Below are positions 6,836 to 14,026 of a stretch of 64,000 nt of DNA, piece by piece. The notes under the pieces were generated by a model that saw only the letters and a list, made by a program, of their open reading frames with translations, searched no databases and was not told where the DNA came from. Location: positions 111,786,001 to 111,850,000 of the forward strand of contig NW_026262690.1 in the NCBI RefSeq assembly GCF_021869535.1, read 5' to 3'. The DNA is from Mytilus californianus. Lineage: Eukaryota. A program made the translations under genes and the position numbers. The first letter of the stretch is position 1. Every line of letters begins with the position of its first letter.

Positions 6836-9800
6836 TTTTATAGTAAAACACAGGACCCAAATGGACTACCATTGTCGCCTATGCAAATGATTACTTCATT
6901 TAAACCACTAATGATATCACTGATTTTGTAATTTTTATATTAAATAAAGTTTTTATCATTTTCTCCAATTTACTGTCAAATGCACAATTGGCATGGTGTA
7001 TGCAACTAGGAAATAAGCCGCCAACACATGTTCGATCAGTACAATATAATCGAAAACAACGTTTACCTTAAAATCCCAGTATTGATATGATACTATTCAA
7101 ATTTGAATAGTAAATGTAAGGTTGTAACCTTCAGTTTGAAAATTTTCATATGAGCTACTTAGCCATGACGTTAATGCGCCAAAGTCGTACATGAAATTTC
7201 GTAGAAGTTGATTTCATTTTAGATATGCACATTTTTCAAGCTCTACATGCTTTAATGTATATTTTGTAATGAGTTAGAATAGGAACAAAAGAACAAAAGT
7301 TGAAGATTTGCCGTCTTCAAATCGCTATTTGACGCATCAACTCATCTGCTGCAGTACTGTCATTTATTAAGGTAATGTTATGTGGTATGCAGGTGTTTAA
7401 GGCATTGCCACGTCTGTTGTCTATGGAGATTATTTGTCCTGTGCGTTTGCTTAATGTAAATTGTTAAGGTTTTGATGATGTAAGTTTGAGAGAAACCATT
7501 TAAGTAGGTCAATGATATTTGTTATGCATTAATACATTTACTGATTAAAACGATTGAGGGACCAATGATCTAACCAATGATTTGATTAACACTTAATATG
7601 AATTATAAATGATTACAAAGTAAAACCAAATCAAACTACAGTAAAAATTTGTAATCTTATGAAGGCACATTTACAATTTAACACTTGGAGTCGTCGTCCT
7701 GCATCGTCCATTAACTCACAAACAATCTTCCCCTCTACAAATACTGGGCCCATTAGAGCCAGACTTGGCCACGATTATCTTTTTTGCTATCTTGTTTAAA
7801 AAATTTGTCTGGCTAACCAACCGAAATGGCTTTATATTGAATATAGGATAAAAACATGTTCTGATTAATATCTTGAATCCGCTATGGGTAGAACAAATAA
7901 ATTCTCAAAGGAGCAGAAATATTCATAATGCTTTTTTTGTATTTTTGCTAAACGTTATAAATATGACAGATAAAAGAAGCTTTGAATAGCTAAAATGATC
8001 AGCATGACAAGATTAATAAATATGGCAACATGGCCGAAGTTGTTGATCAACACAGTATCCATTGTTATCGGAGAGGTTGTAAAATTAACAATTTTTGAAT
8101 TTAAGGCCAAAAATATAAAAGACAAAGAAACACTGTGAACAGCAAAAATGAGCAACAGGACAAATCCTACAATTTGTCATGAAAGCAGAAATAAAATATA
8201 TATAAGCATTAAATATAAATATGTAAATATCAGTATAAAATATGGAGATATGGTATGATTGCCAATAAAACAACTATCCACTGGAGACCAAATCATGTAG
8301 GTGTTAACAACTGTAGGACTAAGATAACTGTTAGGCCTTCAACAATGACATAACCCATACTGAATAGCAAGCGTATATTTAAAAGCCGCCGACATGACAA
8401 AATGTAAAACAAGTCAATGGAGAAAACACAAGGCTTGATTTATATACAAAACAACAAACAAAAACAAATATTATATAAGGCAAGAGTTTACCAATCTTCC
8501 TCAAGCTGCCCTATTAAGTGCAGATGAAACTTATGTTTGATATAATGAATCAAATAGTTTTTGCTTTCAAAATAAATACCAAATATTATATCATGGCCTA
8601 TATAGAGATGATTGATTTATAATATATAATGGAACGTCAGACGAAATAAAAAAAATCGTCTGGCAAATGAGTATAACCCCTTATTCACTGTGTCTAAACT
8701 ACCCCGGCAAAAAATGTTTGGACTCGATGGTATCTAATATCCGGCACGGTGACTGAACACCAATAGACAGAGAAAAGGTAGTTTTCTGTTTATTTCTTTG
8801 TTATTGTTATGATATCGAAGAATATTTATACATATATAACTGTTTTCTATTGTGAGATGTAATATTTTCTACAACCGTTCTAGATTAACAGAGAAATAAG
8901 TAAAAATGCACGTCAAAATGACGAATTGAGTGAACCTTGCCTCGAATTTGTTTAATTTCACCTTAAATTGTTCACATGGTACGGAAAGAAAGATATTGAC
9001 ATGGAGATTGCAAAACTAGTCACTTTGAGCACCTCAATCCTTGTATTTCTGCGTATGGAACGAGAGAAATGGGTCATTTCAAAATGGAAGCACCCGGTTT
9101 TGTCAATGTGTACAACCCGGTTTTGTCCTAGATTTCACAAGGCAGAACCCGGTTTTGTCAAAGAAAAAAAATGCATAATCGCATAACATAATTGAACTTC
9201 AGCAATTAAAAGGAGTTTGGTGGTTGGTTAGAAAACGATTTCTTACAGAGGACAACCTGTTATTTATTTGAATCTGTAAACACTTAATTCCTACTTTATT
9301 GGAACAAAAATAATTATAATTTTGCTTTGCATTAAAAAGAAATACTCTAACTGCGAAATAGACAGAAATGAAGGTTAAACCGCAAATTGAGTTTTAAGCG
9401 CTCTATACGTATTTTTTTATATGAATTATGTAAATTTTAGTTTTTAAACTTAAAATTATAGTTTATGGTCTTAAAAATTGAAGGACGCACATTTGATATG
9501 TGATTCTTTTGCACAACAGGATGGTTATCTTTATAAGTAATCCAATCTACCTAGCGGTGTAAATTTCTATGATCGTTTAAAATAAATCTTCTTAAGGCTA
9601 AATGTTCATTATAAGGCATGATAATCAAACAAATGTATATATGCTTGCAGAATCACCATAGAAAACGAATGTTTATGTTGAGAAAAGGATTACAATAATC
9701 ATGCATTAAAAATCAAATCTATCTATCCCTAATTGTAACTATAATACTAAGTATAAATTAGTATTATAATAGTCTCAGGCCATCGAGAAAATGCAACAAT

Positions 9801-9902
9801 GATTAGTTTATTAATAGTTGTATAAATAAACGGTTCTGTTATCTCTCCATTGTGTTATGATTATCGTACATTGACGTTGGTCAATATATTATTAACAATA
9901 TA

Positions 9903-10066
9903 TAGAGACGGATTCAGGTTTTTTCAAAGTGGGCGTAATTCAAACAGCTTACATACCGCAGAGCGTAGCGAAGCGAACAATGTTTTGACGAATTATGCTA
10001 AAAAAAATCGTAAAAATAAGATTTAATTTTTTTGGGCCATCAAAAGGCCGCCTGGATTCGCCACTG
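9903..10066. mobile_element. Short GC-rich MITE-like insertion nested in the TIR element
   Basis: GACGGATTCAGG...CCTGGATTCGCCACTG imperfect inverted ends. A similar element lies at ~51243-51400. Confidence 0.5.
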
Positions 10067-10920
10067 ATGTTATATAACTAAATCGTATACCAACTTAAAA
10101 TTTTATAAGAAATAAGAAAGCAGGGACACCCGCGAAATTGGATGTATATGAGTAGGATTATTATGTTTATTCTAAAAATTCACATTGATATTTTGGAATT
10201 GTCGGAATGCGAGACCAAGGGATGCAAATTCGTGGCGGCTTGAACTATTTGTATGAAGCTTCATATGTCAGAAGTTAGAAGGCCTGACTGCAACATACCT
10301 CGCACACAGATCTTTTATGTAACCATGTTTCTATCTGTCATATGTCCATTGCCCTTGACCTCATTTTCATGGTTCAGCGATTTTCCTAACAAATTGAATA
10401 GCTGATAATGGTTGATATCTATGATCAAGGTCAACATTTCGTGTTCAAGTCCGTATCTCTAATACCATAAGTAATAGGTCAACTATATTTGCTCGTAAGG
10501 CGCACATGAATATTTAAGTGACCTTAAACTTATTTTCTTGATTAATTGGTAAATGTTAAGTTTTTTTTGTTGGTTTTAATGATTGTAATGTGTTCATGTC
10601 CGTCTGGCAGGTTTCATCAGACCTTGACTTTTTTATGGTTCCACGAACAATGTAAATTTTATGAGATACTTTTATTAAATAATTTCGATAACGATCATTC
10701 CAGCAGTCGGGACATGTCAGTGCGTACAGTCACTCCTGTATAAATAATACGTAGTATTTATTTTTGTTAAAAAAACAAAACGCAATTGAAGTTGTTTTGG
10801 CAATTGAAGTTGTTTTGCCATGTCTGATTAGTTTATCTCGTTCGTGTAAGCCTTAGTTATGAAATGTTAGACTTTTTTTAATTCAAGAACGGTGCAATCT
10901 TGTTTGGAATTCTTGGTTGG

Positions 10921-11640
10921 TTTTAGCTCACCTGACCCCAAGGGAAAAGTGAGCTTTTTTCATCACTTGGCCCCCGTCGTCCGTCGTCTTCCGTTAATTT
11001 TTTACATAATCTTCTCCTCTGAAATTACTGGGCTACAATACATTTAACAAACCTTATCCACAATCTTATGTCGGTTTTAAAAGGTCTAACGAACTTATGT
11101 TCAACTGTTCATCATCATTGGGGTATCTAGTTGAAAAGGTTTTTGATGACCCCCGCTTGTCAACAAAGATGGCCGACATGGCTTAAAATAGAACATAGGG
11201 GGATGCAAGTTTTGTCTATTATTTGAAAACAGCTATAGATAGAGAAAATTTAACAGGGGCAGATATGTTCATAATGTTAAGCTCTACCCTTTGTCCATAC
11301 ACATCAAAACTCTCACACGAATTCTTATAGAAGTTAATGTCCTTGAATGACAAATTTCTCCTTTTTTTTCCATTTCTGTGTATTATCTTGAAATATATAA
11401 AAGTTAAATAGCAAAAATGATCAGCAAGACAATATATACGAATAAGTCGACTTGGTCGATATCCTTGTAAGAATTATTGACCTTTAATTACGATTTTTAC
11501 CATTCTTTGCGTTTTTGACAATTATCTCACAAAAATCTTCTCCTCTTTAACATTTTAATTAAACTTGGCCACACGCTTTATTGCGGTATCTGGTTTGAAA
11601 ACCCACATGATCAGCCATTTGTAAATTTATTTTTTTGTTT
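10921..11640 (+). mobile_element. Helentron/pearl-like non-autonomous element fragment
   Basis: TTTTAGCTCAC...GTGAGCT subterminal hairpin followed by a CCGTCGT microsatellite. Related fragments at ~7680-8100 and ~19200-19935; the latter has a GTGAGCGA..AGGCTC..GAGCTT 3' stem. Confidence 0.6.
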
Positions 11641-12218
11641 CAGGGTACCAGTGTTAACGTTGTTTTTCATAAAATAAACAAGATGACCCCCGCTTGTCAA
11701 CAAAGATGGCCGACATGGCTTAAAATATAACATAGGGGGATGCAAGTTTTGTCTATTATTTGAAAACAGCTATAGATAGAGAAAATTTAACAGGGGCAGA
11801 TATGTTCATAATGTTAAGCTCTACCCTTTGTCCATACACATCAAAACTCTCACACGAATTCTTATAGAAGTTAATGTCCTTGAATGACAAATTTCTCCTT
11901 TTTTTTACATTTCTGTGTATTATCTTGAAATATATAAAAGTTATATAGCAAAAATGATCAGCAAGACAATATATACGAATAAGTCGACTTGGTCGATATC
12001 CTTGTAAGAATTATTGACCTTTAATTACGATTTTTACCATTCTTTGCGTTTTTGCCAATTATCTCACAAAAATCTTCTCCTCTTTAACATTTTAATTAAA
12101 CTTGGCCACACGCTTTATTGCGGTATCTGGTTTGAAAACCCACATGATCAGCCATTTGTAAATTTATTTTTTTTGTTTCAGGGTACCAGTGTTAACGTTG
12201 TTTTTCATAAAATAAACA
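11145..12218 (+). repeat. Near-identical tandem duplication, unit ~537 bp
   Basis: GATGACCCCCGCTTGTCAACAAAGATGGCCG starts at both 11145 and 11682. Copies match through ...CATAAAATAAACAA. Confidence 0.95.
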
Positions 12219-14026
12219 AAACCGGGTTCTATACATAGACAAAACCGGGTCATTGTGTAGTAAACAACATTGACAAAACCGGGTGCTTCCATTTTGACAT
12301 GACCTATTTCTTTCGTTCCATACGCAGAAATACAAGGATTGAGGTGCTCAAAGTGACTAGTTTTGCAATCTCCATGTCAATATCTTTCTTTCCGTACCTT
12401 TCTTTCCGTACCATGTGAACAATTAAAGGAGAAATTAAATAAATTCGAGGCAAGGTTCACTCAATTCGTCATTTTGACGTGCATTTTTACTTATTTCTCC
12501 GTTAATCTAGAACGGTTGTAGAAAATATTACATCTCACAATAGAAAATAGTTATATATGTATATATATTCTTCGATATCATAAAGATAACAAATAAATAA
12601 ACAGAAAACTACCTTTTCTCTGTCTATTGATGTTCCGTCACCGTGCCGGATATTAGATACCATCGAGTCCAAACATTTTTTGCCGGGGTAGTTTAGACAC
12701 AGTGTTATTGAAGTTCACCTATAAAATCTCCAATGATAAAATGTTGTTCTTATAGCGTGTGATAAGATTTTGTGAGGGAATTTGATGTTTGCTATACCAC
12801 TGTTCATTTAAACGCACTTTATGGCAATACCACTATACCAATCAGAATGAAATTTTTTGCAGTCTTTTAAGAAATGATTTTACTTTGTAGCCAAGTATTA
12901 TTTGTGAAACATTAAATGTTTTAAAAGGGCGAATTTTTTGTAGAAAGTCAATAATTATGTAGACTTTTGAAGCCCAAACTTTCTATTGCCTTTAATACGC
13001 AAATTAAAGATCTGAGAAAACTATACCAATACAGATCGACATGTTTTTGAAATTATAGCAAAACTTTTGGTTGACAAATTTTTATTCGTTAATGCATAAA
13101 ATGAACTTAAAATATCTGTCATTTTCTCCCTAACCAGTTTACCCCTATTACTTATCATGATGTGGACCGCTGATTGTTATTGAATCTTACGCAATTCGAT
13201 TGGATTAAGTTATAACTAGTTTACCTTCAAACGAGTTATGCTTTTCATACATGTATATTGATTAAATCAGAACGTGCATGAATGTGTACAGTTACTTAAA
13301 TGACCTTCAAACTGGACATTGGACGAGTCCATATTATGATTTATCAATGAAACTAAAGGTATGAAAGATAAGAACTACCACTTCTTATATTTTCATAAAA
13401 TTTTCCACATACACAGAAGATAAATTATTTTTTAATAACCTATTGCGGAGAAAAAAAAAGAGAAAGTTTACAAATCAGATGTTTTATTCCATAAAACAAG
13501 TCATTTTTCGAAGAGAAATGCCGAAATACATTTTACGCACGGATACGCCAGGTAAAATTATTGTTTATCTTAAAAAAAAAAAAAAAAACATTTAAAAAAA
13601 AATTTCAGTCTCATTGGAATTTTGTTATTACAATTAATCCCAAACTAAAGTAGTCAATAAATAAAGTCAAAATATGTCCGATCTGCCTATTTGTGGACAT
13701 CAAAAGTCAATACGATCGTTTTAAGGTCAATTTCGTCTACCTCACAAAATCTTGTTGAGCACTATAATTTAAAGTGAAATTATTAGATAGGGGTTTTGAT
13801 AACGTCAAAATAGATGATAATATTACTGATGCTTTATCAATTGACCGTACTGAATTATTACAGCAAAACAAATCGAAGGAAAAATGAAAATATTCCGTAG
13901 TTTTAATAACTTAATATAACCCATACATACGTAAAATAAAAAAAAACCTATCATGAAACACTTTCATTTATTACAGTTTGACGAAGAATGTGTTCAATGT
14001 TAAACCAATATTTGCGTATAGCTAAC

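What the first reader, a model, noticed from the sequence alone, without database searches (positions are those of the whole stretch)
8686..12704. 4-kb transposon with RSS-heptamer-like ends and a 5-bp TSD: candidate non-autonomous Transib/RAG-like element
Seen: both ends read CACTGTG inward (the right end is literally CACAGTG on the + strand). An A-tract, GCAAAAAAT, follows 14 nt later and matches 6 of 9 positions of the RSS nonamer ACAAAAACC. Both flanks are TTATT; 3- and 4-bp TSDs do not fit. Established: CAC termini with a 5-bp TSD characterise Transib and ProtoRAG/RAG-like transposons, and RAG-like elements are reported from bivalves. The ~420-bp TIRs are much longer than is typical for them. 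High TIR identity suggests recent mobility. No transposase is visible, so the assignment is inference.
Basis: partly seen in the sequence, partly recalled or inferred. Interest (0 to 1): 0.7.

Follow-up and report, generated by a model that had tools for sequence, protein, structure and literature searches.

The report
Gene-less mussel transposon with RSS-like ends
This is a real but gene-less jumping element, one of several hundred copies in a mussel genome; its ends and 5-base footprint look like those of the Transib/RAG transposons behind antibody-gene recombination, but no such enzyme gene could be found, so that link is unproven.

Summary
Window 8686-12704 is a 4,019-bp element with 424/438-bp terminal inverted repeats. 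Its ends read CACTGTG...CACAGTG and it is flanked by TTATT on both sides.

It belongs to a family with at least 653 recognisable termini in this 1.65-Gb genome. Of 19 independent full copies, 17 have an exact 5-bp target-site duplication (TSD). A paralogous empty site carries the pentamer once. Targets are AT-rich.

The element has no coding capacity. Most copies are about 3.5 kb. The window copy also carries a private 537-bp internal tandem duplication. Each arm has a strongly conserved terminal 40 bp and three copies of a 13-mer about 410-490 bp from the end.

The Transib/RAG reading is only partly supported. The two signature features are met. No RAG1 or RAG2 domain is detectable in the genome. 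The targets are not GC-rich. The protostome RAG-like TIR consensus does not fit. No autonomous partner was found. hAT5 elements also make 5-bp TSDs.

Earlier notes of this scan flagged the same signature at least eight times in this genome. They attribute two look-alike families to a P-element-like enzyme. I could test that only indirectly, and the test found no support.

The family is a few per cent diverged and occurs in runs of four coded organism labels, so it is not strikingly recent.

The parts
8681..8685 (.). Left target-site duplication, TTATT
   Evidence: Read. Identical to 12705-12709. The family-wide TSD is 5 bp.
8686..9109 (+). Left terminal inverted repeat arm (424 bp). It lacks one 14-bp unit compared with the right arm.
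   Evidence: I1, I2. The arm consensus from 30 arms is 438 bp.
8686..8725 (+). Terminal 40 bp: heptamer CACTGTG (8686-8692), 14-nt spacer, A-tract GCAAAAAAT (8707-8715). This is the probable transposase recognition and cleavage end.
   Evidence: The older subfamily copy keeps these 40 bp at 95-98%, against 72-90% in most of the other windows; 241-320 and 401-440 are also high. The first 24 nt occur 653 times in the genome with at most 1 mismatch.
9092..9159 (+). Three direct copies of the 13-mer ACCCGGTTTTGTC, 407-474 bp from the left end. These are candidate subterminal transposase-binding sites.
   Evidence: (D8). There are 6 exact 12-mers in the element, against 0.27 expected in the whole window. 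The 13-mers are kept although the spacers differ between the two sides.
9160..12215 (.). Non-coding internal region. It is a patchwork that includes stretches of other very high-copy repeats (about 10330-10517 and 11082-11269).
   Evidence: ORFs are 74 aa or shorter. No Pfam hit in a sister copy. No Rfam family or tRNA.
11145..12218 (+). Tandem duplication of a 537-bp unit (11145-11681 and 11682-12218). It is seen only in this copy among those compared.
   Evidence: D1, 99%; D3. Sister copies align to both units with a single segment.
12215..12284 (-). Three copies of the same 13-mer in inverted orientation, 421-490 bp from the right end.
   Evidence: (D7).
12267..12704 (-). Right terminal inverted repeat arm (438 bp). 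It ends ...CACAGTG at 12698-12704 and contains a 14-bp tandem unit at 12384-12412.
12705..12709 (.). Right target-site duplication, TTATT

Best explanation
Window 8686-12704 is one copy of an abundant, gene-less (non-autonomous) cut-and-paste DNA transposon family of a mussel.

Shown: the element has about 438-bp inverted arms ending in CACTGTG. The family has several hundred copies, mostly about 3.5 kb, with deletion forms down to 467 bp. Insertions are flanked by a 5-bp duplication of an AT-rich pentamer.

Inferred: a transposase made elsewhere in the genome recognises the terminal ~40 bp, and probably also the three ACCCGGTTTTGTC sites near the inner edge of each arm. It cuts at the CAC/flank boundary and inserts the element through target cuts staggered by 5 bp.

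Which enzyme does this is not shown. Among described superfamilies the CAC ends plus 5-bp TSD fit Transib best. I put a true Transib-type enzyme at only about one in three. The reasons are that no RAG1/Transib-like gene is detectable, the targets are AT-rich, the arms are far longer than usual, and other enzyme types remain open (a P/Kolobok-like fold or hAT5).

The family is one of at least two in this genome with this signature. A CACGGTG-ended, 5-bp-TSD element lies nested inside a sister copy.
For: Anatomy.

Copy number: 334 forward and 319 reverse matches to the 24-nt terminus with at most 1 mismatch, against 0 for the control pattern. The 120-bp end gave 1,065 first-look candidates.

TSD: 17 of 19 independent full copies have exactly 5 bp. 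TSD bases are 88% A/T in the 14 TSDs scored (about 86% over all 17), against a 66.5% background. C is enriched and G depleted just outside the TSD.

Empty site: the flanks of the L043 copy are contiguous in a 91%-identical paralogue (L013) that carries the pentamer once.

Non-coding.

Functional ends: the terminal 40 bp are 95-98% conserved between the subfamilies, against 72-90% in most other parts of the arm. The 13-mer occurs 3 times per arm, with 6 exact hits against 0.27 expected.

Second family with the same signature: L041:3451-8826 has CACGGTG...CACCGTG ends, 70-bp TIRs with 68 of 68 bases identical, and TSD AACTT.

Long TIRs with several transposase-binding sites have a tested precedent in Galileo (PMC3688188).
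Against: No autonomous copy was identified, so trans-mobilisation and the identity of the enzyme are inference.

The role of the 13-mers is untested. A 467-bp copy that lacks them still has a perfect TSD, although it may have been deleted after insertion.

No empty allele of the window's own insertion was seen. Contigs of two samples of the same coded organism bridge the filled left junction.

The conservation comparison between subfamilies rests on one older copy.
Confidence: 0.85

Rival explanations
1. The family is a true non-autonomous member of the Transib superfamily. It would be mobilised by a RAG1-core-type transposase that cleaves at the CAC heptamer through a hairpin on the flank and makes 5-bp TSDs.
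For: The TSD is 5 bp in 17 of 19 copies. The termini are CAC...GTG, and the heptamer CACTGTG matches CACAGTG/CACAATG at the critical positions 1-3. An A-run follows the heptamer. The nested second family has the heptamer CACGGTG, which is close to the Transib consensus CACAATG. Kapitonov and Jurka describe the 5-bp TSD plus CAC heptamer as the Transib hallmark (PMC1131882).
Against: PF12940 (RAG1 core) finds nothing in the genome: one candidate at E=2.7. This test is insensitive for Transib. A Transib-profile survey of mollusc genomes found a single Transib element (PMC10294476). Targets are AT-rich, not GC-rich (against PMC1131882). The A-tract spacer is 14-15 nt, and both ends are identical, so there is no 12/23 asymmetry. 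The 438-bp arms with subterminal repeats are atypical. A 5-bp TSD is no longer unique to Transib (hAT5, PMC12730594).
Confidence: 0.33
2. The family is mobilised by a RAG-like (ProtoRAG/RAGL-B type) RAG1L-RAG2L transposon, as reported in some bivalves.
For: Same signature as above. RAGL transposons with 5-bp TSDs and CAC ends exist in oysters and in some mussels, Modiolus and Bathymodiolus (PMC7204232).
Against: There is no RAG1 (PF12940) or RAG2 (PF03089) match in the 1.65-Gb genome. The protostome RAGL TIR consensus CACTWMCAAACKTYKBB matches only 7 of 17 positions in register. No held paper names Mytilus together with RAG1L.
Confidence: 0.04
3. The enzyme belongs to a different DDE lineage with a P-element/Kolobok-like fold, and the RSS-like ends and 5-bp TSD are convergent. 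Earlier notes of this scan claim this for two look-alike families in the same genome.
For: This is a lead only. Notes s1-307196 and s1-302645 attribute look-alike families to a P-like enzyme. Long TIRs with multiple binding sites are known in the P superfamily (Galileo, PMC3688188). KolobokP families, rich in bivalves including Mytilus, make 3-5-bp TSDs (PMC9587614). Transib is almost absent from molluscs (PMC10294476), yet this genome holds several families with this signature, at least one of them young.
Against: None of the 51 genomic hits to the P-type RNase H domain PF21787 lies within 30 kb of any of the roughly 330 termini that could be listed. The test misses enzymes that Pfam cannot see and about half of the termini. 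P elements make 7-8-bp TSDs. Kolobok ends are RR...YY with direct, not inverted, long terminal repeats (PMC9587614).
Confidence: 0.3
4. The family is a non-autonomous hAT5 element, from the hAT lineage that makes 5-bp TSDs.
For: hAT5 is defined by 5-bp TSDs and lies among animal hAT lineages (PMC12730594, citing Kapitonov and Jurka 2007). hAT genes are very abundant here, with 912 first-look candidates for PF05699. hAT elements commonly carry subterminal repeats.
Against: In the 22 families compared in PMC1131882 (Fig. S7 legend), hAT termini always have G at position 3. Here it is C. None of the 150 scored hAT hits lies inside the long copies, but only 150 of 912 candidates were scored. hAT TIRs are short.
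Confidence: 0.1
5. It is not a transposon but a chance inverted repeat or a product of segmental duplication.
For: Some copies did spread passively. Five share flanks inside a unit of at least 7.4 kb that is 99% identical on four chromosomes, and two lie in an inverted duplication.
Against: There are hundreds of termini in unrelated flanks, 5-bp TSDs in 17 of 19 independent copies, and a paralogous empty site.
Confidence: 0.01

Closest known systems
Non-autonomous Transib elements (Transib-N families of insects; Kapitonov and Jurka 2005, PMC1131882)
   Same: Ends are 5'-CAC...GTG-3' with a heptamer close to CACAGTG/CACAATG. The TSD is 5 bp. There is no coding capacity. The family is abundant compared with any autonomous copy.
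   Different: The arms are 438 bp, against about 38 bp of conserved terminus. The A-tract follows after 14-15 nt, not 12 or 23. Targets are an AT-rich pentamer, not GC-rich. No Transib/RAG1-type gene was found in the host genome.
RAGL-B transposons and their non-autonomous derivatives in bivalves (Martin et al. 2020, PMC7204232)
   Same: Bivalve host, CAC ends, an invariable 5-bp TSD, and non-autonomous TIR pairs exist.
   Different: The TIR consensus does not fit (7 of 17 positions). No RAG1L or RAG2L domain is detectable in this genome.
Galileo (P superfamily, Drosophila; PMC3688188)
   Same: Long internally repetitive TIRs. The terminal ~40 bp are conserved between subfamilies, and several transposase-binding sites lie further inside the arms. 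This is a working model for the three 13-mers.
   Different: Galileo belongs to the P superfamily, and P elements make 7-8-bp TSDs (my knowledge; the figure was not checked in a paper here). No P-type gene is linked to this family.
hAT5 (hAT lineage with 5-bp TSD; cited in PMC12730594)
   Same: 5-bp TSD, animal hosts, subterminal repeats.
   Different: The third terminal base is C, not G. The TIRs are long. No hAT gene was tied to the family.
KolobokP (Kojima and Bao 2022, PMC9587614)
   Same: Rich in bivalves including Mytilus. Terminal repeats are about 450 bp. TSDs are 3-5 bp. Solo-repeat and multimer forms exist.
   Different: KolobokP repeats are direct, with short TIRs of their own and RR...YY ends. 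Here the long repeats are inverted and the ends are CA...TG.

Membership tests
Transib superfamily | 5-bp target-site duplication | tested here: met
   17 of 19 independent full copies have exactly 5 bp. One paralogous empty site carries the pentamer once.
Transib superfamily | Termini 5'-CAC...GTG-3' (RSS-like heptamer) | tested here: met
   CACTGTG and CACAGTG at both ends, invariant in the 30 arms aligned.
Transib superfamily | Second conserved A-rich block (nonamer-like) 12+/-1 or 23+/-1 bp after the heptamer | tested here: inconclusive
   GCAAAAAAT follows after 14 nt (6 of 9 positions to ACAAAAACC). Shifted by one (CAAAAAATG, spacer 15) it matches 7 of 9 positions of the Transib AAAAAAATC. 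Depending on the register, AA falls on nonamer positions 5-6 at spacer 12-13. In an A-rich sequence this is not beyond chance. The two ends are identical, so there is no 12/23 asymmetry.
Transib superfamily | Autonomous partner encoding a Transib/RAG1-core transposase | tested here: inconclusive
   No autonomous copy among about 45 sized copies. PF12940 finds nothing in the genome, but it is insensitive to Transib.
Transib superfamily | GC-rich target preference (typical, not defining) | tested here: not met
   TSD bases are 88% A/T in the 14 TSDs (about 86% over all 17), against a 66.5% background.
RAG-like (RAGL/ProtoRAG) transposons | Convergent RAG1L-RAG2L gene pair in the genome | tested here: not met
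   PF12940 and PF03089 give no match at E<=1, beyond one E=2.7 fragment without any coding context. Caveat: the tool's first look is a filter.
RAG-like (RAGL/ProtoRAG) transposons | Protostome TIR consensus CACTWMCAAACKTYKBB | tested here: not met
   7 of 17 positions match in register. The AAAC block is shifted by 3 nt (against PMC7204232).
hAT5 | 5-bp TSD | tested here: met
hAT5 | hAT termini (YARNG, with G at position 3) | tested here: not met
   Position 3 is C in all arms. The rule comes from PMC1131882, Fig. S7 legend.
hAT5 | hAT transposase in the autonomous partner | tested here: inconclusive
   None of the 150 scored PF05699 hits lies in the long copies, but only 150 of 912 candidates were scored.
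CMC (CACTA/Mirage/Chapaev) | 2-4-bp TSD | tested here: not met
   No copy has a TSD that fits only 2-4 bp. 5'-CACTG and subterminal repeats resemble CACTA, but the TSD rules it out.
P superfamily | 7-8-bp TSD | tested here: not met
   5 bp.
P superfamily | P-type transposase between the family's termini | tested here: inconclusive
   0 of 51 PF21787 hits lie within 30 kb of about 330 listed termini. The test is blind to Pfam-invisible enzymes and to the unlisted half of the termini.
KolobokP | Long terminal direct repeats with RR...YY ends | tested here: not met
   The long repeats are inverted and the ends are CA...TG (PMC9587614).

The most novel reading that the evidence does not exclude
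RSS-type ends (CACNGTG) and a strict 5-bp TSD are used in mussels by a transposase that is not of the RAG1/Transib family, such as a P/Kolobok-like or hAT-like enzyme that Pfam does not recognise. In that case the 'Transib signature' has arisen at least twice. At least two families, one of them young (this one and the CACGGTG family nested in L041), would belong to an undescribed group with 5-bp TSDs; this one has long TIRs.
Probability: 0.4. Interest if true: 0.6.

Novelty: new member of a known kind. Interest (0 to 1): 0.35.

Why it matters
CAC ends plus a 5-bp TSD are routinely used to assign gene-less elements to Transib or RAG-like transposons, and from there to trace the ancestry of V(D)J recombination.

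This mussel genome holds hundreds of such elements in at least two families, yet shows no detectable RAG1 or RAG2 domain. There are two possibilities. Bivalves may hide an active Transib lineage that profile surveys have missed. Alternatively, the signature is not diagnostic and another enzyme type produces it.

Either answer would change how such footprints are read. The answer is within reach: reading a handful of long copies would settle it. In itself the window copy is an ordinary, decaying, non-autonomous element with no sign of a host function.

Tried and rejected
1. I looked for the autonomous partner among copies. Forty best end matches were listed, and 20 ten-kb stretches were fetched. 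All copies proved non-coding, at 0.47-4.7 kb. The 8.9-kb copy (L041) is a 3.5-kb copy with a nested 5.4-kb non-coding element. L040 is truncated at its end, and in L050 family homology stops after about 970 bp.

I did not try to get more by other routes. All later genome work used coordinates only.

3. Pfam searches of the whole genome: RAG1 and RAG2 found nothing. The P-type RNase H domain gave 51 hits, none near the listed termini. The hAT dimerisation domain gave 150 scored hits, none inside the long copies.

4. I searched for other families sharing the 14-nt terminus. There were 11 hits against 5 for the control, which is chance level.

5. I used the TIR-encoded 45-aa ORF as bait in the protein collection, hoping to reach other assemblies. 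No hit.

6. I scanned the metagenome contigs for the terminus. No hit.

7. Reads: contigs of two samples bridge the filled left junction. No joint skipping the element appears among the rows shown, and repeat-derived rows swamp the tables. The orthologous empty site therefore remains unchecked.

8. Rfam and tRNA scans of the element found nothing.

9. Pfam scans of flanking ORFs in the fetched loci found only an RT fragment, a weak GDSL-lipase match, weak protease-like matches and a BEL/Pao-like gag domain.

10. A composite (IS-like arm) reading was rejected. The arms have no inner CAC...GTG end of their own.


Full report
**Observation**

The left junction reads ccccTTATT|CACTGTGTCTAAACTACCCCGGCAAAAAATG. 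The right junction reads ...CACAGTG|TTATTgaag.

The repeat finder gives two collinear inverted-repeat blocks, 323 nt at 94% and 132 nt at 98%. They are offset by one 14-bp unit that is tandem in the right arm. The arms are therefore 424 bp (8686-9109) and 438 bp (12267-12704).

From this copy alone, flank lengths 1, 2 and 5 all fit. The family had to decide between them.

**The family**

The window belongs to a 1.65-Gb assembly. Earlier scan notes call the organism a Mytilus mussel; I did not verify the species.

The first 120 bp of the element have 1,065 first-look candidates, and the 40 that were scored are 97-100% identical. The 24-nt terminus occurs 334 times forward and 319 times reverse with at most 1 mismatch. 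The reversed control pattern occurs 0 times.

I fetched 30 ends and then 20 ten-kb stretches.

- Of 19 independent full copies, 17 have an exact 5-bp TSD. One has 6 bp and one has none.
- The chance of a 5-bp match is about 0.002 per copy.
- No copy fits a TSD of only 2-4 bp, so CMC/EnSpm is excluded.
- The flanks of one copy of an older subfamily (L043:1773-4998) are contiguous in a 91%-identical paralogue (L013). That paralogue carries the pentamer once, so it is an empty site.
- TSD bases are 88% A/T in the 14 TSDs scored (about 86% over all 17), against a 66.5% background. The three bases outside the TSD are C-enriched (36-38%) and G-poor.

**Size and content**

Most copies are 3.2-3.7 kb. 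Deletion forms of 2.4-2.8 kb, 1.77 kb and 467 bp occur. Larger copies carry nested insertions:

- a MULE-like MITE with a 9-bp TSD in L036;
- another repeat in L049;
- a 5,376-bp element in L041.

The window copy measures 4,019 bp because of a 537-bp tandem duplication (11145-12218). None of the sister copies compared has it.

No copy has an ORF above about 95 aa. No ORF of 40 aa or more in a typical copy hits Pfam at E<=1. There is no Rfam family or tRNA. Two internal stretches have enormous read depth, so the interior is a patchwork of other repeats.

**Probable functional parts**

Thirty arms align over 438 bp. Between-copy identity averages 94.8%, and within-copy identity is 89-96%.

Against the main consensus, the older subfamily copy keeps the terminal 40 bp at 95-98%. 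Most of the other windows are at 72-90%, and only two internal blocks (241-320 and 401-440) are also high.

At the inner edge of each arm lie three copies of ACCCGGTTTTGTC. There are six exact 12-mers in the element, against 0.27 expected in the whole window. They persist although the spacers between them differ on the two sides.

I read these as subterminal transposase-binding sites, by analogy with the THAP sites in Galileo's long TIRs (PMC3688188). That is inference. The 467-bp form lacks them and still has a TSD.

**Age**

Copies differ by about 5%, and the window's own arms by 6%. Contigs of runs under four coded organism labels hold the family. Contigs of two samples of the best-matching organism bridge the filled left junction.

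I saw no empty allele, but the output is swamped by repeats. 'Recent mobility' is therefore not shown for this family. The nested CACGGTG element has 68 of 68 identical TIR bases and is young.

**Which enzyme**

This is the open point. The signature of CAC ends plus a 5-bp TSD is the Transib hallmark (PMC1131882). It is shared by RAG-like transposons of some bivalves (PMC7204232).

Against the RAG-like reading:

- Pfam RAG1 and RAG2 find nothing in the genome. The single E=2.7 fragment has no coding context.
- The protostome RAGL TIR consensus fits at only 7 of 17 positions.

For Transib proper I had no model or tool-supplied query, so its absence is untested. A profile-based survey of molluscs found only one Transib element (PMC10294476). 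Transib and RAG prefer GC-rich targets, and here the targets are AT-rich. The 5-bp TSD is also made by hAT5 (PMC12730594), and 4-5-bp TSDs by some KolobokP families (PMC9587614). The CA...TG ends and inverted arms do not fit hAT (G at position 3) or Kolobok (RR...YY ends, direct repeats).

**Earlier notes of this scan**

The same signature was flagged at least eight times in this genome. Two follow-ups state that the full-length relatives of two look-alike families encode an enzyme folded like the P-element transposase. I treated this as a lead.

- I listed about 330 termini.
- I compared them with all 51 hits to the P-type RNase H domain PF21787.
- None lies within 30 kb. The closest is C110:65886857 against 65917209, and that element points away from the hit.
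- The 150 best hAT hits also avoid the long copies.
- No other family shares the 14-nt terminus.

These tests argue against a Pfam-visible P-type or hAT partner carrying these exact ends. They cannot see a Pfam-invisible enzyme or the unlisted half of the termini. Five long +/- pairs of 7.8-30 kb were found and remain unread.

**Verdict**

This is a real, ordinary-looking, non-autonomous cut-and-paste family with a robust 5-bp TSD and RSS-like ends. The Transib/RAG assignment is a reasonable label by signature but is not a demonstrated membership.

My odds are:

- Transib-type enzyme: about 0.33
- RAG-like: 0.04
- P/Kolobok-like: 0.3
- hAT5: 0.1
- something else: the remainder

No referred step arose.

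Noticed in passing
L041:3451-8826 (G000:C99, nested in an 8.9-kb copy of the family): A second, unrelated family with the same signature. It is 5,376 bp long with ends CACGGTG...CACCGTG, 70-bp TIRs (68 of 68 bases identical, so a young insertion) and a 5-bp TSD AACTT. It has no transposase domain. Its ORFs are 95 aa or shorter, with only a weak PAN-domain hit (E=0.004).
   Followed up: partly
G000:C46:33602169-33613293; C165:55893881-55901667; C121:23572105-23580326; C143:56575207-56592319; C24:51583468-51613491: Long +/- pairs of family termini (7.8-30 kb) whose flank dinucleotides are compatible with a shared 5-bp TSD. They are candidate autonomous copies or copies with big nested insertions.
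   Followed up: no
L031, L032, L035, L039, L048 (G000 C165 twice, C143, C121, C35): Five copies have identical flanks and TSD (AATAT). They lie inside a unit of at least 7.4 kb that is 98.8-99.5% identical on four chromosomes. The element was carried along by a larger, recently amplified unit of unknown nature.
   Followed up: partly
G000:C88:89480452, 89482695, 89484938 and G000:C35:2954146-3184140: Three same-strand termini are spaced exactly 2,243 bp apart, which suggests a tandem array of a 2.24-kb unit holding one end. Seven same-strand termini with the same flank are spaced 23-65 kb apart, which suggests tandem segmental duplication.
   Followed up: no
L042 and L043 (G000:C88:102829677-102860145): Two 3,511-bp copies with identical flanks and TSD (TTGTC) lie in opposite orientation about 10.7 kb apart, so they sit in a large inverted duplication. 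An older-subfamily copy (3,226 bp, TSD ATATT) lies next to one of them.
   Followed up: partly
window 8074-8449, 10330-10517, 11082-11269: Summed contig depth is hundreds to thousands of times that of neighbouring sequence in all four runs laid. These are pieces of other extremely abundant repeats, one in the left flank and two inside the element.
   Followed up: no
L036:2045-3093 approx. (nested in a 4.7-kb copy): A MITE of about 1 kb with ~185-bp TIRs starting GGCACTGG and a 9-bp TSD (AACTATTTA). It is Mutator-like by TSD length.
   Followed up: partly
L025:1154-1620: A 467-bp foldback form of the family, made of 192 bp of one arm and 276 bp of the other. It has a perfect TSD ACTAT and lacks the subterminal 13-mers.
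   Followed up: yes
L004:1-1212 (+): An open frame of 404 aa or more without any Pfam domain. It runs off the locus start and ends 290 bp upstream of an insertion of the family. It is outside the element and its nature is unknown.
   Followed up: no
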